Below the pieces are notes generated by a model. The model was not told the origin of the DNA. It worked only from the letters and a program-made list of their open reading frames with translations, and did not search any database. Made by a program: the position numbers and the translations under genes. A stretch of DNA of 64,000 nt from the IMG/VR virus record IMGVR_UViG_3300024252_000004, positions 62,001 to 126,000 of that record; one strand, 5' to 3'. Positions within the stretch are counted from its first letter, which is position 1, and every line of letters starts with the position of its first letter. Shown here in pieces: positions 3,348 to 20,017 of this stretch.

Positions 3348-3540
3348 ATCAGTCACATACATCAAGGCGCAGTGTTGCAATGAAGATTGTTATGCGATTG
3401 ATAATGAGGAGCCATGCTGGGGAGATACACAAGCCATCGATGAAGAATATTACGGTGATGACGATTACTATTGGGTCCATGCTTGCGAAGGTCATCAGGA
3501 CAAATATCATGGCGGAGACTACATAGAGGAGGAGCAATGA
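3340..3540 (+). CDS. Small acidic Cys/His-rich hypothetical protein
   Basis: 66-aa ORF overlapping both neighbours; CCNEDC, CWG, HACEGH. Confidence 0.5.
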   Translation: MSESVTYIKAQCCNEDCYAIDNEEPCWGDTQAIDEEYYGDDDYYWVHACEGHQDKYHGGDYIEEEQ

Positions 3541-5847: not shown

Positions 5848-6647
5848 TGGGTCGTAAGAAAAAAGTATTGGGAGTTATCCCTGCAAGGTATGGCTCCAAT
5901 AGATTGCCAGGTAAGCCACTGGCTGACATAGCAGGTAAGCCTATGATTCAATGGGTATATGAAAGGGCTATGTCTGCGGAACTTGATGGATTAGTTGTAG
6001 CTACAGATGATCAAAGGATTGTGGACGTAGTTAAGGCTTTCGGTGGCGATGTCGTAATGACATCTATGGATCATGTATCTGGCACCGCAAGAATGTGTGA
6101 AGTTGAAGGTATGAAAAGATTTGAGGACTACGACTACTTCATTAATATCCAAGGCGACCAGCCATTGATCGAAGAGTATACCATCAGGATGCTGTCGCTT
6201 AATCTTGTCAATTTCAAGCCAAATGAAATGGCGGTGCTGACGCTTGTGGCATCTCTTAAGAAAGACGAGATAAATAATCCTTCCGTTGCTAAGGTTGTTA
6301 CCGATAAAAATGGAAGAGCGTTATACTTTAGTCGTTCAGCAATTCCTTATACAAGGGAGGGAGATAGCGTCTCCCATTTCTATACAGATTTTCTTAGTAA
6401 GAAGAGTCCTTATCTTAAGCATCTTGGCGTTTATGGTTTTACAAAGAAGACTATCGATAAGGTTAGGGGATTGGAGACTTCTTATTTGGAGGAGACTGAG
6501 AAGCTTGAACAATTAACTTGGCTTTACGAAGGCATTCCTGTTTATACAGCTTTTGGTACGGATGTAAATAAGATATCGGTAGATACCCAAGAGGATCTCG
6601 ATAGGGTCAGGAAGATTGTGGAGAAGCGGGAAAAAGTGCGGTCATGA
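5847..6647 (+). CDS. kdsB: CMP-Kdo synthetase
   Basis: IPARYGSNRLPGKPLA, NIQGDQP, ALYFSRSAIP, HLGVYGF, EKLEQL, SVDTQED. Confidence 0.95.
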   Translation: MGRKKKVLGVIPARYGSNRLPGKPLADIAGKPMIQWVYERAMSAELDGLVVATDDQRIVDVVKAFGGDVVMTSMDHVSGTARMCEVEGMKRFEDYDYFINIQGDQPLIEEYTIRMLSLNLVNFKPNEMAVLTLVASLKKDEINNPSVAKVVTDKNGRALYFSRSAIPYTREGDSVSHFYTDFLSKKSPYLKHLGVYGFTKKTIDKVRGLETSYLEETEKLEQLTWLYEGIPVYTAFGTDVNKISVDTQEDLDRVRKIVEKREKVRS

Positions 6648-6703
6648 TTTATAGAATAAAAGATATAGAATTTTATCAGAAAGTAACAGGATGAAACAAA
6701 GTA

Positions 6704-7288
6704 ATGAAAACAGCGCAAGAGATAATTCAGGAAGAGATTAAGGCACTTCAGGCGATACCTTTAACCGGTATCCAAGAAGCTGTTGACGCCATCGTGGCCT
6801 GCGAAGGTAAAATTGTCTTTACAGGTATGGGAAAGGCTGGCTTAATTGCACGAAAAATTGCAGCGACCTTTGCCTCAACAGGAACGCCAGCATTTTATAT
6901 GCATCCTTGCGAGGCGCAGCATGGCGATCTGGGAATGATCGGGAAAGGCGATATGATACTGGCATTCTCGAACTCAGGTAGGACGAGAGAAGTTGTTGAG
7001 ACCGTCTCTCTTGCTAAGATTTTAGTTGACGGCATGAAACTAGTTACAGTAACATCCAACAGGGCTGCTGAGCTTGCATTAATCTCCGATGTGGTAATCG
7101 AGACAGGAGGATATCCTGAGGTGTGCCCACTTGGAATGGCGCCTACTTGCTCAACAACAGCGATGCTTGTTATCGGAGATGTTCTATCTATGATGGTAAT
7201 GGAAGCTAAGGAATTCTCAATTGAGGAGTATTCTAAAAGGCATCATGGCGGCTATCTTGGACAGAAATCAAGAGGAGAAGTTAAATGA
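6704..7288 (+). CDS. kdsD: Arabinose-5-phosphate isomerase, SIS domain only (no CBS pair)
   Basis: TGMGKAGLIARKIAATFASTGTP, EAQHGDLG, SNSGRT, APTCSTT, RHHGGYLG. Confidence 0.88.
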   Translation: MKTAQEIIQEEIKALQAIPLTGIQEAVDAIVACEGKIVFTGMGKAGLIARKIAATFASTGTPAFYMHPCEAQHGDLGMIGKGDMILAFSNSGRTREVVETVSLAKILVDGMKLVTVTSNRAAELALISDVVIETGGYPEVCPLGMAPTCSTTAMLVIGDVLSMMVMEAKEFSIEEYSKRHHGGYLGQKSRGEVK

Positions 7289-8091
7289 GATCAGTAGTTA
7301 ATCAAGATGGAAAGAAAGTAAGAAGACTTGATACAATTTATATCGGGTACGATAGCAGGGAGCATGAAGCAGTTGAGGTTTTAATTGATTCAATTGAGCG
7401 TCATGCATCAAGACCTCTTAACATTGTGACCTTGAATCAGATGGGCCTTCGTAAAGCGGGACTATACACAAGGGCGCCTCATCTGGATTCTACAGTTTGG
7501 GCCTCAAATCCTTTTGGGCACATGCATGACAGAATGGATGGCAAGCCATATTCTACAGAGTTTAGTTTCTCAAGGTTCCTTGTACCATTCCTGAATCAGC
7601 GTGAGGGATTCGCACTATTCATGGACTGCGATATGTATTTCAGAAGTGACCCTTGTGAGATTTTTGATAATTTCGCAACAGAAGATGCACCAGCAATTCA
7701 GTGTGTTCAGCACGAGTATGAGCATGGTGGAAATCTTAAGTTAAAACTATACGGATGTCCGCAGACTTTCTACAGGAGAAAGAATTGGTCCAGTGTAATG
7801 CTTTGGAACTGTGGACACGCAGGTCACGATAACCTTACAGTTGGAGATGTTAATATGAAGTCCGGAACATGGCTTCATAATTTCAAGTGGCTGGAGGATC
7901 AGGACATTGGTGCTCTACCTGAAGAGTGGAACTGGCTTGACGGTCACTCTCCAGAAGATTTGGAGCCAAAGAATGTTCATTTCACTACTGGCGGACCATG
8001 GTTTGATACTTGGATTGCTGAAAGATTTACAGATCTTCAATACTCTAACGAATGGGTTGAGTTGCGAAAAAACCTAAGTAATAAGAAATGA
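7285..8091 (+). CDS. GT-A glycosyltransferase (GT8-like, common in phage glycan loci)
   Basis: IYIGYDSRE, STEFSFSRFLVP, FMDCDM (DxD), KNWSSVML, WNWL, HFTTGGPWF. Confidence 0.75.
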   Translation: MRSVVNQDGKKVRRLDTIYIGYDSREHEAVEVLIDSIERHASRPLNIVTLNQMGLRKAGLYTRAPHLDSTVWASNPFGHMHDRMDGKPYSTEFSFSRFLVPFLNQREGFALFMDCDMYFRSDPCEIFDNFATEDAPAIQCVQHEYEHGGNLKLKLYGCPQTFYRRKNWSSVMLWNCGHAGHDNLTVGDVNMKSGTWLHNFKWLEDQDIGALPEEWNWLDGHSPEDLEPKNVHFTTGGPWFDTWIAERFTDLQYSNEWVELRKNLSNKK

Positions 8092-8849
8092 AGAAAGTTA
8101 TTTTAACAAATCCTTTAAAGAGCAAAAAGCTTTTTAAAAAACAGGCACGAGCTTTATCGAAAGAATACAAGTATCTATTTTTAAACGCAACTAAGGACGA
8201 GGTTTTTTTTCAAAAGAAAAAAAGGAAAATGTTTGGTTCTTTGCTTGTTCCGGATGGTGATAGTCATTTTCCCAAGGCTCACGATAGATATCAATATGCC
8301 ACCTTTCTGCTTGCAACCATTTATTTGAAAGAAAAAAGAGTGGCGGTAGACGTTGGGGCTCATGTTGGTTTCATGTCAAGAGCAATGTCCGAAATATTCA
8401 ACACAACAATTTCTATCGAGCCAGATCAAAGAAATTATCAGTGCCTTCAGCTTAACTGCCCCAAAGTTCTTCACATCAATGAGGCTGTAGGAACAGGTAA
8501 GGAAACCGGTTCAATAGTCTCTCATATAGAGAATACCGGCATGAATTATTTTGAAGAAGGCAGTGATGGTATGCAGACTTGCAGGATTGACGATTTGATA
8601 GAAGAAACAGATCAGGTTGATCTAATCAAATTCGATATCCAAGGTTTTGAGTATAAGGCTCTACTTGGAGCAGCAAAGACTATTGAAAAATGGATGCCTA
8701 TATTAATAGTGGAAGTTTCTATGGGTAATGGAGAATTTCATGATATAGAAGAAATACGAGAATTGTTATTTAATTTAGGATATGTAGAAGAGCTGAAATT
8801 TGGAAAGGATTGCCTGTATGTTCCGAAAGGAAAATCATTAAGGATATAA
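8088..8849 (+). CDS. FkbM-family SAM methyltransferase
   Basis: VDVGAHVG, SIEP, LIKFDIQGFEYKALLGA. Confidence 0.82.
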   Translation: MKKVILTNPLKSKKLFKKQARALSKEYKYLFLNATKDEVFFQKKKRKMFGSLLVPDGDSHFPKAHDRYQYATFLLATIYLKEKRVAVDVGAHVGFMSRAMSEIFNTTISIEPDQRNYQCLQLNCPKVLHINEAVGTGKETGSIVSHIENTGMNYFEEGSDGMQTCRIDDLIEETDQVDLIKFDIQGFEYKALLGAAKTIEKWMPILIVEVSMGNGEFHDIEEIRELLFNLGYVEELKFGKDCLYVPKGKSLRI

Positions 8850-8850
8850 A

Positions 8851-9789
8851 GTGAAGAAGACAAGGATTGACATAGTTTATGCTAAAAGAAAATCGACTGC
8901 AATAGATAGTATTCCTTGGGTTGAGGGACTTTCAGAATATCTGAAAATCGATCCTGAGATTACAGTATCTTGCGCTCTTGATGGAACACCTGAAGCAGAT
9001 TTAATTATATCTCCAATGGGAACTGGGCATAACCACTCAAAAAGCTCTCGTGCCCTTAGTGATGTCATTAAGAATTCATCTTGCCCTAAGCTTATCGTGA
9101 CTAAAGGAATATTCTCCGGATGGGGGAATATGACAATGACTTTTTCGTATATTGATAGCGGAGGACACATCAATCTTTTTCCAAAAAAAAGGATGATGCA
9201 ACCGGAACATATTAGAAGATTGATAAAGAGAAAACCTACAGGTTTCTCCATACAGCCATGGAAAAGAAATGGGGACTATTTTCTCTTTTGTGCTCAGAAT
9301 AGTCGCCCTCCATATTTCTCATATTATTATAACATAAGTTACAATACTTGGGCGTATAATTGTATACAGCATTTGTTAAAGAAGACAGATGAAAAGATTA
9401 TATATAGATTCCATCCAAGGAAATATCACCAGAATGAGAATTTGAGGTTCGGCAAAAGATTAACAGAATTATCTGATAGGATAGAAGTCTCTCCGTTTGA
9501 AAAGTCATTACAAGATGATTTTGAAGGAGCGAAGAAGGTGTTTACCTACAACTCTGGCGTTGCGATCAAATCAGTTTTCGCAGGAATCCCAACAGTGGTA
9601 GGGTGCAGATATTTTACAGGTCCAACAGCAGTGGTTGGATACGAAAATTTCAAAAAAAATTTAAGGCCGAATAGAACCGAATGGTTTTACAGACTAGCTC
9701 ATACAACTTGGTCCAACAAGGAAGTTCTTGATGGAAAAGCAAACTCATATATTTATGAGCTTGGAATGAAAAAAGATTTTAAAAGGTAA
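8851..9789 (+). CDS. KpsS/KpsC-like (Capsule_synth) GT-B protein, paralogue 1
   Basis: YRFHP...SLQDDFEGAKKVFTYNSGVAIKSVFAGIP C-terminal pattern shared with paralogues. Confidence 0.6.
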   Translation: MKKTRIDIVYAKRKSTAIDSIPWVEGLSEYLKIDPEITVSCALDGTPEADLIISPMGTGHNHSKSSRALSDVIKNSSCPKLIVTKGIFSGWGNMTMTFSYIDSGGHINLFPKKRMMQPEHIRRLIKRKPTGFSIQPWKRNGDYFLFCAQNSRPPYFSYYYNISYNTWAYNCIQHLLKKTDEKIIYRFHPRKYHQNENLRFGKRLTELSDRIEVSPFEKSLQDDFEGAKKVFTYNSGVAIKSVFAGIPTVVGCRYFTGPTAVVGYENFKKNLRPNRTEWFYRLAHTTWSNKEVLDGKANSYIYELGMKKDFKR

Positions 9790-9792
9790 ATC

Positions 9793-10401
9793 ATGGCAAA
9801 TAGATATGGAAATGTAACTAAAACTATCGCAGAATACGAGCCCCTTACTATCTGTGAGATTGGAACCTTCAGTGGGAGAAGAGCAATCTCTATGCTATTG
9901 GCGGCCCTTAAGTATAATAACGGTGTAAGCTATATAGGATACGATTTATTCGAAGAAGCTTCCGATGAAACTGATACTGAAGAATTCAACGGTAAAACTA
10001 CGAGAACAGAGGTGAGTAAGGTTAAAGAAGTCATCGAGAATAAGGTAACAAGAAAAGTTCGAAAAAATAAGAATGGAGACTTCGAGGTTGAACTTGTTAA
10101 AGGCAATACAAATGATGTTCTGCGTAAAGGGAAATATGATTTTGTATATATTGATGGAGGGCATCACATAGATACTATTAGACACGACTATTCCAAAGTC
10201 AGGCGCAGTAAGGTAATCATTTTTGATGACTATTATGATTGCGATGACAAAGATCTTCTTGCAAAAAGAACAGAGAAATTTGGATGCAATAATCTTATCC
10301 ATGAGCTTATGGAAGATCAGGAACTTCAAGTTTCTATCATGCCACTTTATGATACAAGCGGCGAATTCTATACCAAGCAGGTTTTGGTTATAAGAAAGTG
10401 A
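9793..10401 (+). CDS. Class I SAM methyltransferase (Methyltransf_24-like)
   Basis: EIGTFSG, GYDLF, DFVYIDGGH, IIFDDY. Confidence 0.78.
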   Translation: MANRYGNVTKTIAEYEPLTICEIGTFSGRRAISMLLAALKYNNGVSYIGYDLFEEASDETDTEEFNGKTTRTEVSKVKEVIENKVTRKVRKNKNGDFEVELVKGNTNDVLRKGKYDFVYIDGGHHIDTIRHDYSKVRRSKVIIFDDYYDCDDKDLLAKRTEKFGCNNLIHELMEDQELQVSIMPLYDTSGEFYTKQVLVIRK

Positions 10402-11297
10402 AAATCATCCTTTACAAGAGAAGAAAGAAGGAGCCGATGATTGATATCATTTATCCTATGCTGATGGAATCGATGTCCTCTCTTGAGAAGGATTTTCAGG
10501 TCAAATACGAGGATGAATACGAAGTCTCCGACATAGCTATTACTTATGGATTACACAAATACGCTACTAAAGGCGGAAGAGTAAGGAAAGCTATTTTTGA
10601 TGGGCAAGAGAAAGCCGGCAAAGATATGCTGATTATGGAGCGAGGGTTTCTAAAGCGTAGCGATTATTTTTCGCTTGGATTTAGCAACGTAAATGGTAGA
10701 GCTGAATTCTATAACCACAAAAGTCCATCAGATAGGTACAAGGAGCTAGGCATAGAACTATCCCCCTGGCGCGTTAAGGAAGACGGAATTATTCTATTAT
10801 GTGGCCAAGTAGCCTGGGACACCAATGTTCAGCACATCAATTATACAAAAGAGAAAAGTAAGAGTAAGATGATTAAAGGTTATCTTAATTGGCTTAGAGA
10901 TACTGCAATTTATTTGTCAGAAACTTACGACAAAGATGTTATTTTCAGACCTCATCCTTTATTCGCAAAGCCAAGTCTTTACAAAGAGGCTTTAGCTGGA
11001 GTTAATATAGGTTGGTCCGACAGGTCATTGGAGAAAGATCTTAAGGATTCTTATGTATGCGTTGCTTTTAATTCGAATACCTTAGTTGACGCAGCAATTA
11101 TGGGTGTACCGATTGTAGCTTTCGATAGAGGTTCTATGGCTTATCCTATTTCCAACAATATGAAAAAACTAAATAAATTGAAGCTCTACAAAAGAGAGCA
11201 ACTCCTTTTTGATATAGCATACTCTCAGTGGAATTCAAATGAAATTCTCAAAGGAATTCCATGGCAGAGGCTTAAGAAATCAAGGTATGACTCCTAA
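10398..11297 (+). CDS. KpsS/KpsC-like (Capsule_synth) GT-B protein, paralogue 2
   Basis: IMERGF, CGQVAWD, FRPHP, AFNSNTLVDAAIMGVP, IAYSQW. Confidence 0.65.
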   Translation: MKIILYKRRKKEPMIDIIYPMLMESMSSLEKDFQVKYEDEYEVSDIAITYGLHKYATKGGRVRKAIFDGQEKAGKDMLIMERGFLKRSDYFSLGFSNVNGRAEFYNHKSPSDRYKELGIELSPWRVKEDGIILLCGQVAWDTNVQHINYTKEKSKSKMIKGYLNWLRDTAIYLSETYDKDVIFRPHPLFAKPSLYKEALAGVNIGWSDRSLEKDLKDSYVCVAFNSNTLVDAAIMGVPIVAFDRGSMAYPISNNMKKLNKLKLYKREQLLFDIAYSQWNSNEILKGIPWQRLKKSRYDS

Positions 11298-12314
11298 TCT
11301 GCGAGCTTTTTTCTTAGAGTAATCTCCATTATCATTTAGCCGACTACGGAATCGATCCCATACGATTCCGTTTTTCATTTCATCACAGTTCCAACAGCTA
11401 TAAGCTAAGTTGTACAGCCACTGATCTCTATTTGGAAATTTTGGTGTAAGGATTTTGCTATAATTATGATTGGCAACAGGATATGTTAAACAGTCTTTGT
11501 TATCGGTAAAGATTGGGACGCCATTGATGACCGCCACAATAGTTGACGAAGATGTCATAGTAATGCAGGCGATAGCGCGCTCTGTTTCCTCAAGCATTGT
11601 GGTATTGTTAATAATTGATGGATGTCTGCCTATAATTCCTCCAGAGAACGTTATATTATTAACTCCGAGAAATTTTTTCCAGTGTCTTGATCTGTGAGTG
11701 ATTTCATCTCCACCTGGATGAAACCTGAGTCTAATCGGGAAATCGGTTTTCATTCTAATTTCTTTGATAGTATTTCTCAGCCATTTGTCTGCGTCATAAT
11801 TTCGAGTAGACCATCCGCGACCACGTTTATTGTCACTATTAAGACATATGAGAATATGATCACCTTCTTTACGATAGGGTTTTAGTACAATATTTTTCTC
11901 TTTACTAATTTTATCCCAACGATCTGATGGAGAGCCTTCATTAAAGTAGTAACCATCGCTTGGATACACAGAAGTATGAGAGACTCTAAGGTAATGAAGT
12001 GGATCAATTTGATTTTTCGGAAGATTGGTGCCGGCATATTTTAGCGGATCAGCATCAATGAATATACATTTTTTGCCGCGCGCCAAGTGAGCTTTAAATA
12101 CTTTTTTTCGCACACTTTGGGTATACCCAAGATTTTGCCCATAAAAGCCAAAGATAAGAGCGATGTCGCAGTTTCTATATTCTGGTTTATTTACGATAAT
12201 TGCTCTATCTTCAGACTTCCTAACACCTTCTGCAAAGCTATGCAAAATTCGTCTTTTTGAGTCAGTGGATGAGTTACCAACCGTTTCTAAAAAAATCCCA
12301 ACTTTCAGTCTCAC
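11280..12314 (-). CDS. KpsS/KpsC-like (Capsule_synth) GT-B protein, paralogue 3 (inverted)
   Basis: LRFHP, TSSSTIVAVINGVP, LAYSCW; GTG start behind GGAG. Confidence 0.65.
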   Translation of the reverse strand: MRLKVGIFLETVGNSSTDSKRRILHSFAEGVRKSEDRAIIVNKPEYRNCDIALIFGFYGQNLGYTQSVRKKVFKAHLARGKKCIFIDADPLKYAGTNLPKNQIDPLHYLRVSHTSVYPSDGYYFNEGSPSDRWDKISKEKNIVLKPYRKEGDHILICLNSDNKRGRGWSTRNYDADKWLRNTIKEIRMKTDFPIRLRFHPGGDEITHRSRHWKKFLGVNNITFSGGIIGRHPSIINNTTMLEETERAIACITMTSSSTIVAVINGVPIFTDNKDCLTYPVANHNYSKILTPKFPNRDQWLYNLAYSCWNCDEMKNGIVWDRFRSRLNDNGDYSKKKARRLGVIP

Positions 12315-12349
12315 GTTAATTCTCCGTCAGTCTCACGTTAATTCTCCGT
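12306..12349. repeat. Perfect 22-bp tandem duplication (CAGTCTCACGTTAATTCTCCGT x2) covering the RBS and start of the minus-strand gene
   Basis: Read directly at 12306-12327 and 12328-12349. Confidence 0.9.
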
Positions 12350-12352
12350 CGC

Positions 12353-12360
12353 TACTATTA
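12353..12360 (+). promoter_or_regulatory. Candidate phage promoter motif TACTATTA
   Basis: 32 nt upstream of ATG 12393 in a divergent intergenic region; a TATAAATA is also present at 12369-12376. Confidence 0.4.
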
Positions 12361-12392
12361 TACTTTTATATAAATATAAGGAAGCCTACCTA

Positions 12393-13148
12393 ATGAGAAA
12401 CATATTATTAACATTTAGTGACTCATACATTGAAAATGCAAAGGCTATGCTATCATCCATATATACTCACTCCAAAAATATTAGGCTAATTTTGTATATA
12501 ATCAACGCTTCTGAAGAAAACAGGAAGAGCCTTGAAGAGGAGTTTGAGCTGCTTAGAGCATTGCGTAATGACATACTCATAGAAGAGAATTATATATTCA
12601 AAGATTTGGATGAGTCAATCAATAAGAGACATAAGACTAAAGAATACAGCGAGCTAATGGCTTACTCTGCGAACTTAAGATTCTTAGTAATATACAAATT
12701 GCTAAAGTCAAGAGAGCTTTTAGATTTGATTTATTTGGATACTGATTCTATTTTAAATAAGGATATCGAATTGTTTTATGAAGATGTTAAGGGCTACGAT
12801 ATTGCTTTCCGACTAAGGGAAGGCGCAAGTAAAACTAAAGGGGCACTAAGTGGTGTATTGTATTTTAAGAATTCAGATAAAATTCTTGAATTTACAAAGA
12901 CCTTAAAAAAGGAAGTCTCAAAGGCCGGAGTTCTTAAGTGGTATTCGGATCAGATAGCGCTAAGAGGAACTTTTTATAAAAACAGAGAGTTTGTCAATCA
13001 TTATCAGCTTTTAGATAAACATATAGATTGGATGTTAAATGATGACAGTATAATCTGGGTTGGAAAAGGTGCGTTCAAAGATTTTGAAAAGTACGTCGAG
13101 GTAAAGGAATGTTATCTTGAGAAATATCAAGAATTAATTAAGGAGTAA
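12393..13148 (+). CDS. GT-A/nucleotide-diphospho-sugar transferase-like protein
   Basis: YSANLRF, YLDTDS (DxD), SGVLYF, WYSDQ. Confidence 0.6.
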   Translation: MRNILLTFSDSYIENAKAMLSSIYTHSKNIRLILYIINASEENRKSLEEEFELLRALRNDILIEENYIFKDLDESINKRHKTKEYSELMAYSANLRFLVIYKLLKSRELLDLIYLDTDSILNKDIELFYEDVKGYDIAFRLREGASKTKGALSGVLYFKNSDKILEFTKTLKKEVSKAGVLKWYSDQIALRGTFYKNREFVNHYQLLDKHIDWMLNDDSIIWVGKGAFKDFEKYVEVKECYLEKYQELIKE

Positions 13149-13149
13149 A

Positions 13150-13920
13150 GTGTCTATTTTATATATCACATCTTTTAGTGGTCATCTCTATAATCTAACA
13201 GGAAAGAGGCTTATTGAGACCTTTAAGAAAACCAAAACAGAAGGTGACCTTTTTTGTTACGTAGAAGGTATGGACACTTCTTTAATCAATGGCAAAAATA
13301 TTACAGTTGAAGACATGAGCGATAATAGGTTCTATAGAAGATGGTTCGAAGCAAATCTTGATATTATACCTGAAAAATTTGGTGGCAAAGCTACAAAGGA
13401 AAGTAGTTTTCAGGCATTTAAGACTCCAAACTATAGAACTGCGCAGTGGACTAAGAAGATTGCAACAATGAAGTACGCCATGGAAAATTATACGGACCAA
13501 TATGATTACTTTATGTGGGTAGATTGCGATTGCTTTTTTACAAATACGTTTACTGAGCAAGATTTAGTTAAAGCACTTCAAGGAAAGTCATTCGGCTATC
13601 ATCTCGGCAGGGACCGTACCAAGAAAAGGATGGGCGTAGAGACAGGGCTTCTTGGGTTTAAGAACGATAAGTACTCTAAGAAGGCATTATCCAAATGGAT
13701 TAAGAAGTATAATGGTGCTGGATTTAAACAGCACGAATGGTGGAACGATGCACACATGTTTTTTTATGTTCTTGATGCAAACCCTAAGCTTAAGGAGAAA
13801 GGTATAGATTTAGTAACTGATTATGGAGACACAGGTAGGTCAAAATCACACGTCATTATGAGAGGAGACCTTGGTAACTTTTTTGATCATCAAAAAGGAT
13901 ACCACAAACGAAACCTATGA
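13150..13920 (+). CDS. GT-A-like glycosyltransferase
   Basis: WVDCDC (DxD), VETGLLGF, EWWNDA, FDHQKG. Confidence 0.6.
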   Translation: MSILYITSFSGHLYNLTGKRLIETFKKTKTEGDLFCYVEGMDTSLINGKNITVEDMSDNRFYRRWFEANLDIIPEKFGGKATKESSFQAFKTPNYRTAQWTKKIATMKYAMENYTDQYDYFMWVDCDCFFTNTFTEQDLVKALQGKSFGYHLGRDRTKKRMGVETGLLGFKNDKYSKKALSKWIKKYNGAGFKQHEWWNDAHMFFYVLDANPKLKEKGIDLVTDYGDTGRSKSHVIMRGDLGNFFDHQKGYHKRNL

Positions 13921-14729
13921 AATTTTCCGTAAAACATGATAGCGGTTTTAAAGGCGGAATCAGAGATGAGATAAGGGCTTTAAAACCGAGGGTAGTTAAA
14001 AAATTCTCAGACATTAGAGATGATTATCTTTTTGTAAATGGGATGAAAGAAATGATCTCGATCAAAAGGCATACAGGTGGTTTTCCGCAGAACTATATTT
14101 TTGTAGACTCAGGTTATCTTGGTAATTTCAGAGATAAAGTCAAATATACAAGAATGATTCCAAATGCAATGCATCCGCCAGACTACGACGTTCCTCGTGG
14201 AGAAATATTTTCGTTTCTAAGGGGATATGACAAATATTATGAGACGGAGTATCTTAAGATGCTGGAGAATCAGTATGACTACAGTGCATATAATGGCGCC
14301 ATTATTATTCCTCCATCAAGGAAGTATTGTTTTCTTGAAGAGATAGATCCAGTAAGATGGGCTCAGGTTGTTGAATATGTAGAATATTCTTCCTATTTTG
14401 ACTCTTTCTATGTGAGAAAGAAATCTAAAGATAGAGAGGAGCGTATGTTACACAATCCTATCTATAATGATATGAGCGAAAAATCTGCTTTGATTTGTCA
14501 TAGTAGCATTGCTTCGGTAGATGCTCTTCTATATGGAATGCCATTTATTGATTTAGGAGCCGGCCCCCTTGTTCACATGTCTTCAAATAAAAAGAGTTTA
14601 TCGAGAAATAAGTTTCATAGCCAGGAGCAGATAGTCGATGCTCTCAATAAGCTGCTATTTTACCAATGCGTTCCGTTTACTTTTAAAAAGAAGTTACTTG
14701 AGATTATGCATTTTTATGAGTGCCTTTAA
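13917..14729 (+). CDS. Divergent KpsS-like GT-B protein, paralogue 4
   Basis: FVDSGYL, HSSIASVDALLYGMP, LLFYQ pattern like the other paralogues. Confidence 0.5.
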   Translation: MKFSVKHDSGFKGGIRDEIRALKPRVVKKFSDIRDDYLFVNGMKEMISIKRHTGGFPQNYIFVDSGYLGNFRDKVKYTRMIPNAMHPPDYDVPRGEIFSFLRGYDKYYETEYLKMLENQYDYSAYNGAIIIPPSRKYCFLEEIDPVRWAQVVEYVEYSSYFDSFYVRKKSKDREERMLHNPIYNDMSEKSALICHSSIASVDALLYGMPFIDLGAGPLVHMSSNKKSLSRNKFHSQEQIVDALNKLLFYQCVPFTFKKKLLEIMHFYECL

Positions 14730-15467
14730 GGCCGCTCCACTTGTAAGCTCTTCACGACTGAACTGATTATACATAAGATTTTTGATCCATTCTGTTCTGT
14801 CTGGACGGATAAGTTTTTCAACATTCGAGAGCTTTTGTGCTGATACGAATTTGCTGGCAGCTTCGCCAAGTACGATTGCGGGTGTGCCATGGAAAATAGC
14901 TTCTGTAGCAGCATTGCTGTTATAAGCAACAATACAATGTGCATTTTTAGCGGCATTAACTAAGGATTTTGAACCTTCGTATCTATCTCGAACTATTGGT
15001 CTCGCCCTAATAAGGATGTCCCTATTCGAATATTCCCTGAGTTCGGTAACAGTAGACTCCAGCCATTTTTTGTTATCAAACCCCCAATACCTGCCGGCCT
15101 TTGCGCATGGAGGGACAACAAGAATGTAATCTCCGTTTTTTTTCCAAGATTTAGGCTTAATTTTGATACCTCTACGCCATGAGCTAAAGTCTCTCATCCT
15201 CTCCATTTGAAAAGAATTATAACATACTCGCATCCATTGCTTCTTTCCGTCATCAATAATGTATCCCCTATCGATAAAGAAGTAAGGAATTCCGTAAGCC
15301 TCAAGTTTTATGATTAGCTTCATTCTTCCGAAGCCGGTAAAGGCAACGGTATATCCTTTCTTTTTTAGCTTTACTAAATCTTGTTTGTGTATGTTTGTGA
15401 TGGGAGCATTGGCTCCTTCTGCGAATTCACGAGTGAATCTCGTATCGTCATGGCAAATCAATTTCAT
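14694..15467 (-). CDS. KpsS-like GT-B protein, paralogue 5 (inverted)
   Basis: FIDRGY, VVPP, AYNSNAATEAIFHGTP, LMYNQF. Confidence 0.6.
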   Translation of the reverse strand: MKLICHDDTRFTREFAEGANAPITNIHKQDLVKLKKKGYTVAFTGFGRMKLIIKLEAYGIPYFFIDRGYIIDDGKKQWMRVCYNSFQMERMRDFSSWRRGIKIKPKSWKKNGDYILVVPPCAKAGRYWGFDNKKWLESTVTELREYSNRDILIRARPIVRDRYEGSKSLVNAAKNAHCIVAYNSNAATEAIFHGTPAIVLGEAASKFVSAQKLSNVEKLIRPDRTEWIKNLMYNQFSREELTSGAALKALIKMHNLK

Positions 15468-16252
15468 TAGGTTATCCTATGGTATTTAGTTAAAAAGTCT
15501 ATAGCTTCACCGTTTGACAGTTCGTCAACAGTGAATTGGTTACAGAATAAGTTTTTCAACCAAAGCTCTCTATCAGGATAGCAAAGGCTCTCTATGTCTG
15601 AGAGGTCTGTCCTGGCAACAAATTTGCTTGCGGCATCTCCAAGGACGATTGCTGGAACCCCACTAAAGATAGCCTCAGTTGCTGCATTGCTATTATACAC
15701 AACGATGCAGTGAGCATCTTCAAGTGCAGCTAACAATGATGTATCTCCATGATACCTTGCGATTTTATTATCAGGCTTGTACCTTATGATCACTTCTCTA
15801 TCGGAGTTTTTATCAAGATATTTAACAACTCTATTTAGCCATTTATCTTTATCAAATTTATAGAACTCGCTGGTCTTTTTACTTGGAGGACACACCACAA
15901 TTTTAGAGCCCCCTTTTCTCCATGGCTCGGGAGTTACAGGTGAGACGTTTCTCCATCCTTTAATATCTCTCATCTCATTCATCTGAAGGGAGTTGTAGGA
16001 TACACGTATCCAAAATTTTCTTTCCCCAAAAATATAAGCCCTGTCGAGAAAGAAGTATGGAATGCCAAGCTCTTCAAATTTTGATATAAGTTTAAGTCTT
16101 CCAAGTCCCGTAACTACGGCAGTATAACCAGAGCTTTTGATTGCTCTTAAATCCTGTTCGTATAAGTTCATAAGCGGAGCCTTAGCTCCGAACGAGAAAT
16201 GACTTGAGAATTTTTTGTCATCATGGCATATAATCTTCATTCGTTCACCCAT
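15467..16252 (-). CDS. KpsS-like GT-B protein, paralogue 6 (inverted; tandem duplicate of paralogue 5; start may be 16240)
   Basis: MKIICHDD vs MKLICHDD, FLDRAY, VYNSNAATEAIFSGVP, LFCNQF. Confidence 0.6.
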   Translation of the reverse strand: MGERMKIICHDDKKFSSHFSFGAKAPLMNLYEQDLRAIKSSGYTAVVTGLGRLKLISKFEELGIPYFFLDRAYIFGERKFWIRVSYNSLQMNEMRDIKGWRNVSPVTPEPWRKGGSKIVVCPPSKKTSEFYKFDKDKWLNRVVKYLDKNSDREVIIRYKPDNKIARYHGDTSLLAALEDAHCIVVYNSNAATEAIFSGVPAIVLGDAASKFVARTDLSDIESLCYPDRELWLKNLFCNQFTVDELSNGEAIDFLTKYHRIT

Positions 16253-16266
16253 ACTAATTATTTCGA

Positions 16267-16924: not shown

Positions 16925-17560
16925 ATGAAACATGTTGGCGGACACGAAGGCAAAACTTGGATAGATTATGGTGCCTTAAAAGCTTTGGTAGATAGATTTC
17001 AAAATGCCAAAACATTTATTGATATAGGTTGCGGTCCAGGCAAACAGGTTGAGGTGGCGAAGGCTTTGGGGCTATCTGCTATTGGGGTCGATGGAGATCC
17101 TGAGATGACAAAGTTGAAGCATGTTAATCTTTTTGATTTTTCTAAGAAAAAAGCAGCTAAAGATGATCTGCCATTTCTTCCGAAAAGAAAATATTTCGAC
17201 ATTGGGTGGTCAACAGAATTTCTCGAACATATTGATGAGAAATACATTGAGAATTTTATGCCATTATTTGCTTTGTGCAAAGTTGTGGTCATAACTCATG
17301 CAACTCCGGGTCAAAAAGGGCATCATCATGTCAATGAACAATTATTTCCTTATTGGAAAGATATATTTCATAGTTATGGCTTAAATGAAGATAAAGAACT
17401 CACAAAGCTTCTTCGGATTAAATCAACAATGAAACAGAAAAAGATTAACCACTTTGTAAAGTATAAGAAAGACGGTACACCAAAGGTTAAAAGGATCAAG
17501 TCATCCTTCATGGTAAAATCAGGAAGAGTATTTATAAACACAAAGTTAAAGGAGCTATGA
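16925..17560 (+). CDS. Class I SAM methyltransferase
   Basis: IDIGCGPG, GVDG, STEFLEHI, HATPGQKGHHHVNEQ. Confidence 0.75.
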   Translation: MKHVGGHEGKTWIDYGALKALVDRFQNAKTFIDIGCGPGKQVEVAKALGLSAIGVDGDPEMTKLKHVNLFDFSKKKAAKDDLPFLPKRKYFDIGWSTEFLEHIDEKYIENFMPLFALCKVVVITHATPGQKGHHHVNEQLFPYWKDIFHSYGLNEDKELTKLLRIKSTMKQKKINHFVKYKKDGTPKVKRIKSSFMVKSGRVFINTKLKEL

Positions 17561-18531
17561 TGCTTAGAGCAGTTGTAACAGGTGCCGGCCAGGACTCGTC
17601 CTATTTGGCAGACCTTCTTCTTGAGAAGGGATATGAAGTTTTGGTGTTTACTCGCCGTCGTTCTGTTAATAATGAGAACGAAAATCTTAAACATATTATC
17701 GATCATCCTAACCTAACGGTGATGCATGGAGACATTACAGACCCAACTTTCGTCGGAAGAATTCTGCACGATTTCAAACCGCATGAGTATTACGGTCTTG
17801 CGGCACAGTCCCATGTAGGATACTCCTTTAAAGATCCTGTTCATACATTTGACGTAACAGGTAGGGCAGTTGTTATGCAGCTTGATCTCATTAGAGAGTT
17901 CAGCCCCGCAACCCGTTTCTATAATGCTGCTACCTCTGAACTGTTCGGTGGCCTTCATGTTCCTGATACGGGTTATACAGAGGAGTCTCCGTTCTATCCA
18001 CGCTCACCATATGCAGTGGCAAAGGCCGCAGGATTCTATGCCACAAGGAATTATAGAGAGGCGTACGGTCTGTTTGCCTGTTCAGGAATTCTATTCAATC
18101 ATTCCTCGCCAAGAAGAGGGCATGATTTTGCCACAAGAAAGATGACCCGAGGTATCGCAAAGGTGAAGCTTGGAATGGAAGAGCATTTGAGGATGGGCAA
18201 CCTTGAGCCGTATAGAGATGAGGGTCATGCAAAAGATTATGTCAAGGCTCAGTGGCTTATGTTGCAGCAGGAAGAGCCAGATGATTTCGTAATTGCCACT
18301 GGTTATGGGGCAAGCATAGAGGATATGTTTAAGTATATATGTGACCTTGCAGGTTTGAAATTTGAGGATGTATACAGATCAGACCCCAGATTCATGAGGC
18401 CATCGGATGTTCCGTTCCTTAGAGGCGATCCTTCAAAGGCAAAGACCGTTCTTGGATGGGAGCCTGAGTACGATTGGCAGAAACTTCTTAAGGAAATGTA
18501 TGAAGCGGATTTGGCCGAGTTAGATGTTTAA
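17557..18531 (+). CDS. gmd: GDP-mannose 4,6-dehydratase
   Basis: GQDSSYLA, AAQSHV, ATSELFG, PRSPYAVAK, GILFNHSSPRRG, FATRK. Confidence 0.95.
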   Translation: MMLRAVVTGAGQDSSYLADLLLEKGYEVLVFTRRRSVNNENENLKHIIDHPNLTVMHGDITDPTFVGRILHDFKPHEYYGLAAQSHVGYSFKDPVHTFDVTGRAVVMQLDLIREFSPATRFYNAATSELFGGLHVPDTGYTEESPFYPRSPYAVAKAAGFYATRNYREAYGLFACSGILFNHSSPRRGHDFATRKMTRGIAKVKLGMEEHLRMGNLEPYRDEGHAKDYVKAQWLMLQQEEPDDFVIATGYGASIEDMFKYICDLAGLKFEDVYRSDPRFMRPSDVPFLRGDPSKAKTVLGWEPEYDWQKLLKEMYEADLAELDV

Positions 18532-19162
18532 GAAGCTTTTAAAACGAAACGATTTTGATTATTGTATAGTAGGAAATTCGCCATGCGAAGTTGGCCAGAA
18601 AAATGGTGAGAAGATTGATTCTCACAAGTTAATCTTCAGGTTCAATGATTTCTCGTTGGACCAAGGTTTTCAGGAGGATTATGGCTCCAAGGTAAATATA
18701 TGGATCCGAGGAACTAACGATAAACTGGTTTACACAATGGAACAGAAGAAGGAATTATTAGAAGATTTAGATCTCATTATCCTTCGCGCCAAAGATGATA
18801 GAAATAAGAAGTTTAGAGACTACTGCAAGACTAACGGTATAAAATATTACGTGCTTCCGCTTGAAAATGAGCTGGAGCTTACGAAGGACCTTGGGCGATG
18901 CCCAAGCACAGGTCTTCTTTTGCTCTATAGCATCAAGAAGGTTACGGGTGGCTTGGACCGAAGCAGAGTTTATGGATTTTCTTTTTGCAGAGAGAATAGA
19001 AGCAAAAGAAAAACCGGTGGTCAGATTCATTACTACAACAAAGATGATCTTGTAAATCCTGTTACCGGAAAGGTAGAGAGCATTAAGAATACTTTCCTCA
19101 TCTCAAAGCATGATTGGGGGAGGGAAGAAATATATTTTAGGAACAAGATACTGAGAGGTTGA
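18524..19162 (+). CDS. GT29-family sialyltransferase-like protein
   Basis: Sialylmotif L (CIVGNS...IDSHKLIFRFN...EDYGSK), S (PSTGLLLL...VYGF), HYY and VS-like HDWGRE. Confidence 0.8.
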   Translation: MFKKLLKRNDFDYCIVGNSPCEVGQKNGEKIDSHKLIFRFNDFSLDQGFQEDYGSKVNIWIRGTNDKLVYTMEQKKELLEDLDLIILRAKDDRNKKFRDYCKTNGIKYYVLPLENELELTKDLGRCPSTGLLLLYSIKKVTGGLDRSRVYGFSFCRENRSKRKTGGQIHYYNKDDLVNPVTGKVESIKNTFLISKHDWGREEIYFRNKILRG

Positions 19163-19163
19163 A

Positions 19164-20015
19164 ATGAGTGAAGAAGCTGAAACAAAAGAAGAGTTTGTGC
19201 CTGTAAAGATCGGTGTCATTGGGATGGGATTTGTTGGAGGATCCGTTTTTGAATTTTTTTCGAAAGCAGGAGAACTTATGTATTCCTATGATAAGAAAGA
19301 ACTCTGGACTATACCAGGAGGCGAAGGGGAATTTGCAAGTAACAAATTTGAGGATTTAATTCCTACAGACTTTGTATTTATATGTCTGCCTACACCTTAC
19401 ATTGAAGGGTTCGGCTTTGACTATACAGCGCTGCATGAGAATTTCCTGAAGTTGGCACAAGCAAAGTACCAGGGAATCGTCGTCGTCAAAAGCACCATGG
19501 AGCCAGGAACTTTGAGAGCTTTAGCTGATAAGTATAAGTTAGCAATGGTTCATAACCCGGAATTTCTTACTGCAAGAACTGCGGTTGAAGATTTTGCCAA
19601 CCAGAAGCATGTAGTCGTTGGAGGCTTTGAGTTCTCCGTATGCCAAAAGGTTGTAGCTCTATATCAGAGACATTTCGAGGCACAGTATACGATTTGTGAT
19701 GCTGAACAAGCAGAGTTGATGAAGCTATTCTGTAACAACTTCTATGCAGTAAAGGTTCAATTGTTCAATGAGTTTGCTTTGACCTGCAAAAGAATGGGCG
19801 TTAAATATGAAGATGTGAGAAGCACTATGCTTAGAAACGGCTGGATTAATCCTATGCACACTGATGTGCCGGGACCAGACGGGCAATTTAGTTATGGAGG
19901 GGCATGTTTCCCCAAGGACACCAATGCTTTGCGAGACTTTATGAAACGTCACGGCGTTCCTTGCGAAGTTCTTGAGGCATGTATTAGTGAACGAAATAAG
20001 ATGAGGAAAGATTAA
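19164..20015 (+). CDS. ugd: UDP-glucose/GDP-mannose dehydrogenase family protein (short form)
   Basis: IGMGFVG, CLPTP, KST, NPEFL, GGACFPKD. Confidence 0.85.
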   Translation: MSEEAETKEEFVPVKIGVIGMGFVGGSVFEFFSKAGELMYSYDKKELWTIPGGEGEFASNKFEDLIPTDFVFICLPTPYIEGFGFDYTALHENFLKLAQAKYQGIVVVKSTMEPGTLRALADKYKLAMVHNPEFLTARTAVEDFANQKHVVVGGFEFSVCQKVVALYQRHFEAQYTICDAEQAELMKLFCNNFYAVKVQLFNEFALTCKRMGVKYEDVRSTMLRNGWINPMHTDVPGPDGQFSYGGACFPKDTNALRDFMKRHGVPCEVLEACISERNKMRKD

Positions 20016-20017
20016 AT

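What the first reader, a model, noticed from the sequence alone, without database searches (positions are those of the whole stretch)
8851..16252. Six KpsS/KpsC-like paralogues, three inverted, next to a CMP-Kdo pathway
Seen: ORFs 8851, 10398, 11280(-), 13917, 14694(-) and 15467(-) share a C-terminal R-x-[HKR]-P...[NS]S...[EDA]A...G[VITM]P...L-x-Y/N-x-Q/C-W/F pattern. The 14694/15467 pair is a recent tandem duplicate. Only three keep the HP dipeptide. Known: KpsS/KpsC (GT107) are CMP-Kdo-dependent beta-Kdo transferases that build capsule linkers. Inference: an expanded, diversifying set of ulosonate transferases assembling an oligo-Kdo or Kdn glycan.
Basis: partly seen in the sequence, partly recalled or inferred. 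Interest (0 to 1): 0.6.

Follow-up and report, generated by a model that had tools for sequence, protein, structure and literature searches.

The report
Six Kdo-transferase-like genes in jumbo phage
A 395-kb marine jumbo phage carries six old, diverged copies of an unnamed, mostly viral enzyme family with the fold of bacterial Kdo (capsule-linker) sugar transferases, but only one copy keeps the full catalytic kit, so most of them probably use a different chemistry or sugar.

Summary
The six ORFs are real paralogues. A profile built only from outside sequences picks exactly these six out of the phage's 1447 ORFs (E 1.6e-101 to 1.2e-7; next ORF 0.21). None matches Pfam Capsule_synth. Confident models of two of them (pLDDT 93 and 90) nevertheless match KpsC (GT107), WbbB (GT99) and KrkA (GT140) best, at Z 13.9-12.4 and 11.4-9.5. 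A 148-sequence profile reaches KpsC by sequence (E 2.3e-4) and lines up QxxxD, RxHP and S...GxP.

Only ORF 10398 keeps both the nucleophile Asp (QVAWD) and RPHP. ORFs 8851 and 11280 keep HP but have no Asp. ORFs 14694 and 15467 have PP..K plus R-x-[RK]-P. ORF 13917 has neither motif.

The 14694/15467 pair is not recent: 51% aa identity, 59% nt identity, and each copy has its own orthologue in related phages.

The family is large (6086 clusters at 50% identity) and mostly phage-borne. It usually occurs as 2-5 copies per locus, next to a GT-A transferase, and nearly always without Kdo genes.

The window is a roughly 23-kb island of soluble glycan-building enzymes. It includes KdsD/KdsA/KdsB, a NeuB-like pair, a GT29-like protein, methyltransferases and a sulfotransferase. 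The acceptor is unknown.

Verdict: the fold and kinship are supported. "Six ulosonate transferases" is shown for none and plausible for one to three.

The parts
10398..11297 (+). Paralogue B (299 aa). It is the only copy with the complete motif set: Q137-V-A-W-D141 (QxxxD), R184-P-H186-P187 and the N-domain acid E81. It is the best candidate for a CMP-beta-Kdo-dependent retaining transferase.
   Evidence: (E 9.2e-67). The nearest Atlas clusters are viral, with 10-18% of members carrying PF05159.
11280..12314 (-). Paralogue C (344 aa). It keeps RFHP and the N-domain Asp. At the nucleophile position it has N...G-W-S where QxxxD would be.
   Evidence: E 1.6e-101; model pLDDT 93.2; KpsC Z 13.9.
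8851..9789 (+). Paralogue A (312 aa). It keeps Q and RFHP. It has no Asp at the nucleophile column, and Thr replaces the otherwise 99%-conserved N-domain acid.
   Evidence: (E 3.4e-29). It has a weak hit to the TIGR04331 LIC12162-family transferase.
13917..14729 (+). Paralogue D (270 aa), the most degenerate copy. It has no Q, no D and no HP (RKKS instead), but keeps S...G-M-P. It may be non-catalytic or use another donor.
   Evidence: (E 1.2e-7). Orthologues are present in L008 and L009.
14694..15467 (-). Paralogue E (257 aa). It has PPCAK in place of QxxxD and RARP in place of RxHP. It keeps the N-domain Asp.
   Evidence: (E 4.8e-82).
15467..16252 (-). Paralogue F (261 aa; public gene calls start 4 codons in, giving 257 aa). 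It has PPSKK in place of QxxxD and RYKP in place of RxHP. It is the tandem partner of E, and its stop overlaps E's start by one base.
   Evidence: E 1.1e-78; model pLDDT 89.6; KpsC Z 11.4.
5068..7288 (+). CMP-Kdo supply: KdsA (5068-5847), KdsB (5847-6647) and a KdsD/KpsF-type arabinose-5-phosphate isomerase SIS domain (6704-7288).
3471..5053 (+). Second ulosonate route: a NeuB-family synthase without the C-terminal domain (3471-4379) and a PseF/NeuA-like cytidylyltransferase (4376-5053). The sugar is not identified.
7285..8091 (+). GT-A/GT8-like viral glycosyltransferase (phrog_28018). It is the most constant neighbour of the family in other phages (61 of 79 loci) and is sometimes fused to a family domain.
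8088..8849 (+). FkbM-type methyltransferase.
9793..10401 (+). Methyltransf_24 methyltransferase. Its end overlaps the start of paralogue B by 4 bases.
12393..13920 (+). Two GT-A-like ORFs: GT8-like (12393-13148) and DUF6492-like (13150-13920). The Pfam hits are weak.
   Evidence: A DUF6492-like neighbour is present in 25 of 79 phage loci.
16299..17560 (+). Carbohydrate-type sulfotransferase (16299-16916) and a class I methyltransferase (16925-17560).
17557..20995 (+). GDP-mannose 4,6-dehydratase, a GT29-like (sialyl-motif) protein at 18524-19162, an NDP-sugar dehydrogenase and an NAD-dependent epimerase.
154..1071 (+). GT4-type (GT-B) glycosyltransferase at the left edge of the island.

Best explanation
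The six ORFs are ancient paralogues of a large, unnamed and mainly phage-borne glycosyltransferase family. The family has the trimmed GT-B fold of the retaining beta-Kdo transferases (the GT99/GT107/GT118/GT140 superfamily). They lie in a roughly 23-kb island of soluble glycan-building enzymes in a 395-kb marine jumbo phage.

ORF 10398 keeps every motif the covalent mechanism needs: Gln and Asp of QxxxD, RxHP for CMP, and an N-domain acid as the likely base. It most likely transfers Kdo from the CMP-beta-Kdo made by the adjacent KdsD/KdsA/KdsB, with retention.

ORFs 8851 and 11280 keep the CMP-binding RxHP but have no nucleophile. If active, they probably use a CMP-activated ulosonic acid by a one-step (inverting, sialyltransferase-like) mechanism.

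ORFs 14694 and 15467 ([RK]P instead of HP, PP..K instead of QxxxD) and ORF 13917 (neither motif) have changed donor site. Their donor is unknown, and 13917 may be non-catalytic.

Together with three GT-A enzymes, a GT4-like and a GT29-like protein, three methyltransferases and a sulfotransferase, they would build a complex acidic, methylated and sulfated glycan in the cytoplasm. The acceptor is not identified; a phage protein is the most likely one.

Shown: paralogy, fold, motif states, age, distribution and neighbours. Inferred: donors, mechanism and acceptor.
For: Paralogy.

Fold: the model of 11280 has pLDDT 93.2. Foldseek's top hits are KpsC at E 1.3e-7 to 2.1e-6, then KrkA and WbbB. VIA-align gives 6mgb Z 13.9, 6mgd 13.5, 5fa0 13.0 and 9yfx 12.4, and the next entry scores 9.5. 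The model of 15467 has pLDDT 89.6, and the same four structures lead at Z 11.4-9.5.

Sequence bridge: profile A3 hits KpsC 6mgd at E 2.3e-4 and WbbB at 8e-3, with QxxxD, RxHP and S..EA..GxP aligned. Family member P0152 passes Pfam Capsule_synth. The nearest Atlas clusters are viral, with 10-18% of members carrying PF05159.

Motif states of each paralogue.

A QxxxD subfamily with GQ(V)P(W)D(T/A)S(V)Q, very like KpsC's GQVESDAS, contains ORF 10398.

Need for the Asp: PMC10148158 (the D160A variant forms no adduct) and PMC12887879 (QXXXD is absolutely conserved in GT99/107/140).

Kdo supply next door. All three phages of this lineage carry the Kdo genes together with a Q..D+HP copy.

No membrane-spanning segment in any of the 29 island ORFs.

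Multi-copy arrays are the rule: 69 of 79 other phage loci have 2-5 copies.
Against: No activity was measured and no coordinates were superposed. 'No nucleophile' therefore rests on alignment columns, and another acid could sit nearby in 3D.

The link between QxxxD and phage Kdo genes is weak outside this lineage. L019 has a Q..D+HP copy with no KdsA within 10 kb, and L046 has KdsA with no such copy.

Kdo, NeuB and cytidylyltransferase genes are absent from 78-79 of the 79 other loci, so the family as a whole is not tied to phage-made ulosonates. A Gram-negative host would supply CMP-Kdo anyway.

None of the six passes Pfam Capsule_synth.

The acceptor is unsupported by any direct evidence.

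The GT29-like protein is an equally good user of the NeuB-route sugar.
Confidence: 0.6

Rival explanations
1. One reading: all six are active CMP-ulosonate (Kdo or Kdn) transferases that together polymerise an oligo-Kdo/Kdn chain, as KpsS and the two KpsC modules do for capsule linkers.
For: All six share the KpsC/WbbB-like fold family. Two CMP-ulosonate routes lie next door. KpsC itself works as a pair of diverged modules with different linkage specificity (PMC10148158).
Against: Five of the six lack the Asp that is absolutely conserved and essential in every characterised retaining Kdo transferase (PMC10148158, PMC12887879). Three lack the His of HP, and 13917 lacks the Pro too. In 79 other phage loci, arrays of the same subfamilies occur with no Kdo or NeuB genes nearby. 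The island also holds five other transferases and GDP-/UDP-sugar enzymes, which points to a mixed glycan.
Confidence: 0.15
2. DNA hypermodification: the array glycosylates a hydroxylated base in phage DNA, possibly with Kdo, to escape host nucleases. Several transferases would extend the sugar chain, as in the polyarabinosylated 5-hydroxycytosine of RB69 and DLP3.
For: In the other jumbo-phage clade the array sits between ssb-uvsX-uvsY and a DNA helicase. In this window it is followed by a dCMP deaminase and a UvrD helicase. Multi-transferase DNA glycosylation is known (PMC13326640). A probable Kdo adduct on 5hmC made by a phage GT-B enzyme has been reported (bioRxiv 10.1101/2023.12.21.572611). 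All six proteins are basic, with pI 8.8-9.8.
Against: No thymidylate-synthase-family gene (the source of 5hm/5ho pyrimidines) is found in this complete genome or in a 98%-complete relative. No Tet/JBP hit was found either, though that control was uninformative. Known DNA transferases resemble T4 beta-GT or GT4 enzymes, not KpsC (PMC13326640 Table 1). With eleven or more transferases, three methyltransferases and a sulfotransferase, the island is far larger than any known DNA-sugar pathway. Gene neighbourhood in jumbo phages is weak evidence.
Confidence: 0.1
3. Host-envelope remodelling: the enzymes act on the host's lipid-linked LPS or capsule intermediates at the inner face of the membrane, as KpsS and KpsC do on phosphatidylglycerol. 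This would change the cell surface during infection, for example for superinfection exclusion.
For: The closest characterised enzymes all work on lipid-linked or lipid-anchored glycans (PMC10148158, PMC9587256). The proteins are basic. In bacterial MAGs the family lies with sulfotransferases, a methyltransferase and an ABC transporter.
Against: The island has no flippase, polymerase, ABC exporter or priming transferase, and no membrane-spanning segment in 29 ORFs. The family is overwhelmingly viral. A lytic jumbo phage has little time to rebuild an envelope.
Confidence: 0.15

Closest known systems
KpsC / KpsS, GT107 (Pfam PF05159 Capsule_synth): retaining beta-Kdo transferases that build the poly-Kdo capsule linker
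   Same: It is the best structural match for both models (Z 13.9/13.5 and 11.4/11.1; Foldseek E 1e-7). It is the only family reached by sequence profile (E 2.3e-4), with QxxxD, (K/R)xHP and S..EA..GxP in register. ORF 10398 and its subfamily carry GQVxWD(T/A)S, close to KpsC's GQVESDAS. Both occur as several diverged modules used together.
   Different: None of the six passes the Pfam model. Five of the six lack the nucleophile Asp and three lack His-Pro. They are single-module proteins of 257-344 aa with no predicted membrane anchor. They are phage-encoded, with no kpsMTED export genes.
WbbB N-terminal domain, GT99: retaining beta-Kdo transferase that caps an O-antigen
   Same: Structural match at Z 13.0 and 10.6. 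The profile hits it at E 8e-3, with Q228...D232 and R-A-H-P aligned to the family's motifs.
   Different: WbbB has an added helical domain and is part of a larger multi-module protein. There is no significant pairwise sequence similarity.
KrkA N-terminal module, GT140 (E. coli K13 capsule; PMC12887879)
   Same: Structural match at Z 12.4 and 9.5. Both are examples of a Kdo-transferase fold with negligible sequence similarity to GT99/GT107.
   Different: KrkA keeps QTLND with an absolutely conserved Asp and has Ser in place of the K/R of (K/R)xHP. No sequence match was found even with the 148-sequence profile.
Bacterial GT-B sialyltransferases (GT38, GT52, GT80)
   Same: They share the (K/R)xHP CMP-binding motif. 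They use an N-domain acid as general base in a one-step inverting reaction, which is the mechanism proposed here for the Asp-less, HP-bearing copies (8851, 11280).
   Different: The structural match is much weaker (polysialyltransferase 5wc6 Z 8.6, within the generic GT-B background). No sequence match was found.
Phage DNA glycosyltransferases (T4 beta-GT-like and GT4-like Aat enzymes; PMC13326640, bioRxiv 10.1101/2023.12.21.572611)
   Same: They are phage-encoded, several transferases act in series, they lie next to sugar-nucleotide genes including an arabinose-5-phosphate isomerase, and Kdo has been reported as one DNA-linked sugar.
   Different: They belong to a different branch of GT-B folds and use UDP-sugar donors. 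They are always paired with a ThyA-family or TET enzyme that makes the hydroxylated base, and none was found here.

Membership tests
GT107 / Pfam PF05159 Capsule_synth (KpsC, KpsS) | Match to the curated family HMM above its cut-off (20 bits) | tested here: not met
   No hit for any of the six at E up to 10. A six-frame search of the whole phage genome gave no match at E <= 10. One external family member (P0152) does pass, at 24 bits, and 1 of 33 A2 members scores E 0.016.
Retaining beta-Kdo transferase superfamily (GT99/GT107/GT140) | Trimmed GT-B fold closest to KpsC, WbbB and KrkA | tested here: met
   The 11280 model gives Z 13.9, 13.5, 13.0 and 12.4, and the next entry scores 9.5. Foldseek probability is 1.00 at E 1.3e-7. 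The 15467 model gives Z 11.4, 11.1, 10.6 and 9.5. The other four were not modelled and are tied in by sequence only.
Retaining beta-Kdo transferase superfamily (GT99/GT107/GT140) | QXXXD motif: Gln binds the Kdo carboxylate and Asp is the covalent nucleophile (absolutely conserved; PMC12887879, PMC10148158) | tested here: not met
   Met only in ORF 10398 (Q137-V-A-W-D141). 8851 has Q but no D. 11280 has N...G. 14694, 15467 and 13917 have P/S and no D. Family-wide, D occupies that column in 58 of 148 sequences and G in 61.
Retaining beta-Kdo transferases and sialyltransferases | (K/R)XHP CMP-binding motif | tested here: inconclusive
   Met in 8851 (RFHP), 10398 (RPHP) and 11280 (RFHP). Changed to RARP in 14694 and RYKP in 15467. 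Lost in 13917 (RKKS). Family-wide, H is present in 133 of 148 and P in 137 of 148.
Retaining beta-Kdo transferase superfamily | General-base Glu from the N-terminal domain (Glu66 in KpsC-N; Glu102 in KrkA) | tested here: inconclusive
   An N-domain acid (E81 in 10398 numbering) is D or E in 99% of 148 family members and in five of the six copies; 8851 has Thr. Its structural equivalence to Glu66 could not be checked because no coordinates were available.
Retaining beta-Kdo transferase superfamily | Transfers Kdo from CMP-beta-Kdo with retention, via a Kdo-enzyme adduct | not testable with these tools
   This needs protein, CMP-Kdo and LC-MS. Only the supply genes KdsD/KdsA/KdsB are shown next door.
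Phage DNA glycosylation systems | A ThyA-family or TET/5mYOX enzyme in the genome that makes the hydroxylated pyrimidine acceptor | tested here: not met
   PF00303 is absent from G000 (100% complete by CheckV) and from the 98%-complete relative G002, and the controls worked. PF12851 gave no hit, but its control did not ring, so that half is uninformative.
TIGR04331 LIC12162-family transferase (O-antigen loci) | Match above the curated cut-off (225 bits) | tested here: not met
   Only 17.9 and 21.5 bits, over about 100 C-terminal residues of ORFs 8851 and 10398. This is a distant relative at most.

The most novel reading that the evidence does not exclude
The Asp-less branches are the QxxxG(W)S type and the 'PP..K / R-x-[KR]-x' type. 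Together they make up nearly all copies in jumbo-phage arrays. They could be new glycosyltransferase families that reuse the Kdo-transferase scaffold for a different mechanism or donor. The arrays, always with a GT-A partner and often with methyl- and sulfotransferases, would then be a widespread phage-specific assembly line. It would decorate jumbo-phage virions (or, less likely, their DNA) with a complex acidic glycan made entirely in the cytoplasm.
Probability: 0.3. Interest if true: 0.75.

Novelty: new variant of a known kind. Interest (0 to 1): 0.55.

Why it matters
Retaining Kdo transferases are a small, recently defined group (GT99, GT107, GT118, GT140), known only from bacterial capsules and O-antigens. 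All of them rely on one Asp for an unusual covalent mechanism.

This work finds a very large relative of that group: 6086 clusters at 50% identity, 1843 of them at E <= 1e-30. It lives mainly in phages, is invisible to Pfam and PHROGs, comes in arrays of 2-6 diverged copies, and mostly lacks that Asp.

If the copies are active, the scaffold supports more chemistry than is now known, and large phages make elaborate glycans of their own. That parallels the capsid glycans of giant eukaryotic viruses.

It also offers one clean test case, ORF 10398, for a phage Kdo transferase fed by a phage-encoded CMP-Kdo pathway.

Tried and rejected
- **Pfam, PHROGs and NCBIfam on the six:** nothing usable. There were only sub-threshold hits to DUF6716, TIGR04331 and noise.
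- **Small profiles against PDB sequences:** A1 gave WbbB at E 1.5 only, and A2 gave nothing relevant. Only the 148-sequence profile reached KpsC.
- **Word-based homologue searches:** few, unnamed relatives.
- **Context of three QxxxD-type relatives by exact look-up:** contigs of 3 kb or less, uninformative.
- **Megablast of the island against deposited phages:** no match.
- **Expectation that QxxxD copies track phage Kdo genes outside this lineage:** not borne out (L019, L046).
- **First guess that the other phage loci sit in a capsid module:** wrong. The neighbours are ssb, uvsX, uvsY and a helicase, and the 'small' contigs are fragments of roughly 350-kb phages.
- **Promoter and terminator scan of 8000-17000:** no more sites than shuffles give.
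- **PDB sequence searches of unknown island ORFs 1073, 2074 and 21722:** nothing.
- **Expression:** no RNA run holds the stretch, so expression was not assessed and read laying was not used.
- **Careful tree search:** did not finish. The tree cited is the quick IQ-TREE one, and the placement of the long 13917 and 8851 branches within it is unsure.

Full report
**Where the window lies.** The window is bases 62001-126000 of a 395,127-bp IMG/VR virus record that CheckV rates as complete. It encodes a TubZ/PhuZ-like tubulin, UvsW- and DnaB-type helicases, PrkA, an intein-bearing SpoVR, an intein-bearing ribonucleotide reductase and PhoH. This is a jumbo phage. Near-identical DNA occurs in seawater and marine metagenomes from 22 studies, and no RNA run holds it.

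**Checking the observation.** The six ORFs are at the stated coordinates, three of them on the minus strand.
- Pairwise BLAST links them at 20-27% identity, apart from the tandem pair.
- The fair test used an HMM built from 27 external relatives only, searched against all 1447 ORFs of at least 60 aa in the phage. It hits exactly these six, at E 1.6e-101 (11280), 4.8e-82 (14694), 1.1e-78 (15467), 9.2e-67 (10398), 3.4e-29 (8851) and 1.2e-7 (13917). The next ORF scores 0.21.
- The count of three HP dipeptides is right.
- ORF 13917 has R-K-K-S, so it fits only part of the pattern.

**Age of the tandem pair.** 'Recent tandem duplicate' is wrong.
- The pair is 51.2% identical in protein and 58.6% in DNA.
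- Third codon positions agree at only 43.5% of identical residues.
- Two related phage contigs (L008 and L009) carry the same island in the same relative orientations, with six and five paralogues.
- In a quick maximum-likelihood tree every window copy groups with its own orthologue. The 14694 and 15467 clades are separate, with SH-aLRT 95-99.
- The careful tree search did not finish, and the long 13917 and 8851 branches are unsure within the tree.

**What the proteins are.** Pfam, PHROGs and NCBIfam give nothing above threshold. A six-frame search of the genome with Pfam Capsule_synth finds nothing at E <= 10. Structure decides the matter.
- The AlphaFold2 model of ORF 11280 has pLDDT 93.2 and pTM 0.90.
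- Foldseek against the PDB puts KpsC first (8fux, 8fuw, 6mgc and 6mgb at E 1.3e-7 to 2.1e-6), followed by KrkA and WbbB.
- An independent all-against-representatives search gives KpsC 6mgb Z 13.9, KpsC 6mgd 13.5, WbbB 5fa0 13.0 and KrkA 9yfx 12.4. There is then a gap to 9.5 for generic GT-B proteins.
- The model of ORF 15467 (pLDDT 89.6) gives the same four at Z 11.4, 11.1, 10.6 and 9.5.

**Sequence then confirms the structure.**
- An exhaustive profile search finds 6086 clusters at E <= 1e-3 and 1843 at E <= 1e-30.
- A profile of 148 of these sequences hits KpsC 6mgd at E 2.3e-4 and WbbB at 8e-3.
- In those alignments the family's G-Q-x-x-x-D lies on KpsC's GQVESD and WbbB's Q228...D232. R-x-H-P lies on KPHP/RAHP. 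[NT]S...EA...G-x-P lies on the same elements.
- One strong family member passes Pfam Capsule_synth at 24 bits against a cut-off of 20.
- The nearest ESM Atlas clusters to ORF 10398 are Uroviricota 'hypothetical protein' clusters in which 10-18% of members carry PF05159.

**The catalytic residues.** In GT99, GT107 and GT140 the Asp of QXXXD is the covalent nucleophile and is absolutely conserved. The D160A variant of KpsC forms no Kdo adduct. The Gln binds the Kdo carboxylate. (K/R)XHP binds CMP and is shared with sialyltransferases. A Glu from the N-terminal domain is the general base (PMC10148158, PMC12887879).

Reading those columns for the six copies:

| ORF | QxxxD position | RxHP position | N-domain acid (position 81) |
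|---|---|---|---|
| 10398 | QVAWD | RPHP | Glu |
| 11280 | N...G-W-S | RFHP | Asp |
| 8851 | Q, no Asp | RFHP | Thr |
| 14694 | PPCAK | RARP | Asp |
| 15467 | PPSKK | RYKP | Asp |
| 13917 | none | none (RKKS) | Asp |

Across the 148 family members:
- The nucleophile column is Asp in 58 and Gly in 61.
- His is present in 133 and Pro in 137.
- The N-domain acid is D or E in 99%.
- W165, R184, S226, G236, P238, R266, E282 and G286 are nearly invariant.
- ORF 10398 belongs to a well-defined QxxxD subfamily whose motif, GQ(V)P(W)D(T/A)S(V)Q, closely resembles KpsC's.

**How the family is distributed.**
- A scan of IMG/VR with the 15467-type alignment found 192 relatives.
- In the 79 loci kept besides this phage's own, 69 carry 2-5 family copies within 20 kb.
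- The contigs are fragments of roughly 350-kb phages.
- The most constant neighbour is a homologue of window ORF 7285-8091, present in 61 of 79 loci. It is sometimes fused to a family domain in 550-aa proteins.
- The Atlas places that ORF among viral GT-A/GT8-like transferases.
- A DUF6492-like protein, an epimerase, an FkbM methyltransferase and a GDP-mannose dehydratase recur in 20-25 loci.
- KdsA, KdsB, NeuB and the cytidylyltransferase occur in 0-1.
- Of 248 family copies in phage loci, only four combine Q..D with HP: window ORF 10398, its two orthologues and one in L019.
- In that other clade the array lies between ssb-uvsX-uvsY and a helicase.
- Three bacterial MAG loci were found. In a Pseudomonadales chromosome the gene is flanked by three sulfotransferases.

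**The island in this window.** From about 154 to 22753 it holds:
- a GT4-like transferase;
- two unknown ORFs;
- a short HAD-like ORF;
- a NeuB-family synthase without the C-terminal domain, plus a PseF/NeuA-like cytidylyltransferase;
- KdsA, KdsB and a KdsD-type SIS domain;
- the GT-A partner;
- three methyltransferases;
- two more GT-A-like ORFs;
- a sulfotransferase;
- GDP-mannose dehydratase;
- a GT29-like protein;
- an NDP-sugar dehydrogenase and an epimerase.

None of its 29 ORFs has a membrane-spanning segment by a hydropathy scan. The six paralogues are basic, with pI 8.8-9.8.

**Most likely working.**
- ORF 10398 has all that the covalent retaining mechanism needs and sits 3.7 kb from KdsB. 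I take it as a CMP-beta-Kdo-dependent retaining transferase (inferred, about 0.6).
- ORFs 8851 and 11280 keep the CMP site but not the nucleophile. With the N-domain acid as base (present in 11280, absent in 8851), a one-step inverting transfer of a CMP-activated ulosonic acid is the simplest reading (inferred, weaker).
- The 14694/15467 pair and 13917 have altered donor sites. Their donors are unknown, and 13917 may be non-catalytic.
- The whole island would make a mixed, acidic, methylated and sulfated glycan in the cytoplasm.
- The acceptor is open. I favour phage proteins because the set is soluble, viral and lacks export genes.

**Rival readings.**
- DNA glycosylation has precedent, including a probable Kdo-5hmC (bioRxiv 10.1101/2023.12.21.572611) and polyarabinosylated 5-hydroxycytosine (PMC13326640), and the gene neighbourhood hints at it. 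However, no ThyA-family gene is present in this complete genome or in a 98%-complete relative. Known DNA transferases also have other GT-B folds, and the island is far too large for such a pathway.
- Remodelling of the host envelope cannot be excluded.

**Comparison and novelty.** The family works like, and is related to, GT107/GT99/GT140. The six do not pass the GT107 model, and five fail the superfamily's defining QXXXD test, so I do not file them as GT107 members. I found no paper describing phage-encoded KpsC-like arrays, though the library is not complete. I rate this a new variant of a known kind: a phage-borne, largely Asp-less branch of the Kdo-transferase fold.

**Limits.**
- No coordinates could be superposed, so the residue states rest on alignments.
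- Four of the six were not modelled.
- Expression was not assessed.

Noticed in passing
window 18524-19162 (+): A 212-aa protein matches the sialyl-motif region of GT29, the eukaryote-type sialyltransferase family (E 2.1e-9). It is conserved in both related phage contigs. It is an alternative user of the NeuB-route CMP-sugar.
   Followed up: partly
window 7285-8091 (+); L016:10699-12351 and similar: This ORF (phrog_28018, 'unknown function') looks like a viral GT-A/GT8-like transferase. It accompanies the family in 61 of 79 phage loci. In about 20 loci it is fused N-terminally to a family domain, giving proteins of roughly 550 aa.
   Followed up: partly
window 48463-51036 and 51807-54989 (+): The SpoVR-like gene and the ribonucleotide reductase large subunit each carry an intein with a LAGLIDADG homing endonuclease.
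   Followed up: no
window 44524-51036 (+): PrkA, a 389-aa ORF and SpoVR lie together, like the bacterial prkA-yeaH-spoVR stress operon, here inside a phage.
   Followed up: no
window 32843-34342 (+): A TubZ/PhuZ-like tubulin, typical of jumbo phages that position their DNA or build a nucleus-like compartment.
   Followed up: no
window 3471-4379 (+): The NeuB-family synthase is only 302 aa. It aligns to residues 21-286 of 349-aa NeuB structures, so it lacks the C-terminal antifreeze-like domain. It scores below the NeuB and PseI equivalog cut-offs, so the sugar made is not identified.
   Followed up: partly
window 2074-3027 (+) and 1073-2077 (+): These two unknown ORFs are conserved in L008 and L009. 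ORF 2074 has weak hits to UDP-GlcNAc 2-epimerase (E 0.018) and to TIGR04396 'surface carbohydrate biosynthesis protein' (E 1.7e-4). They may be further divergent GT-B-like enzymes. The family HMM does not detect them.
   Followed up: partly
L093:6719-12114 (Pseudomonadales MAG chromosome): A bacterial QxxxD-type family member is flanked by three sulfotransferase genes and an animal-type haem peroxidase. The sulfotransferase association echoes window ORF 16299-16916.
   Followed up: partly
L037:4735-18342 and about 75 similar IMG/VR loci: In another clade of roughly 350-kb phages the transferase array always lies between ssb-uvsX-uvsY and a DNA helicase. It is preceded by a 255-aa protein with a cytidylyl-/adenylyltransferase-like N-terminal half and a cupin-like C-terminal half.
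   Followed up: partly
L009:1-2129: In a related phage the UvrD-type helicase downstream of the island carries a Hint/homing-endonuclease insertion and is followed by an ART-PolyVal ADP-ribosyltransferase-like gene. Both are absent from this window.
   Followed up: no
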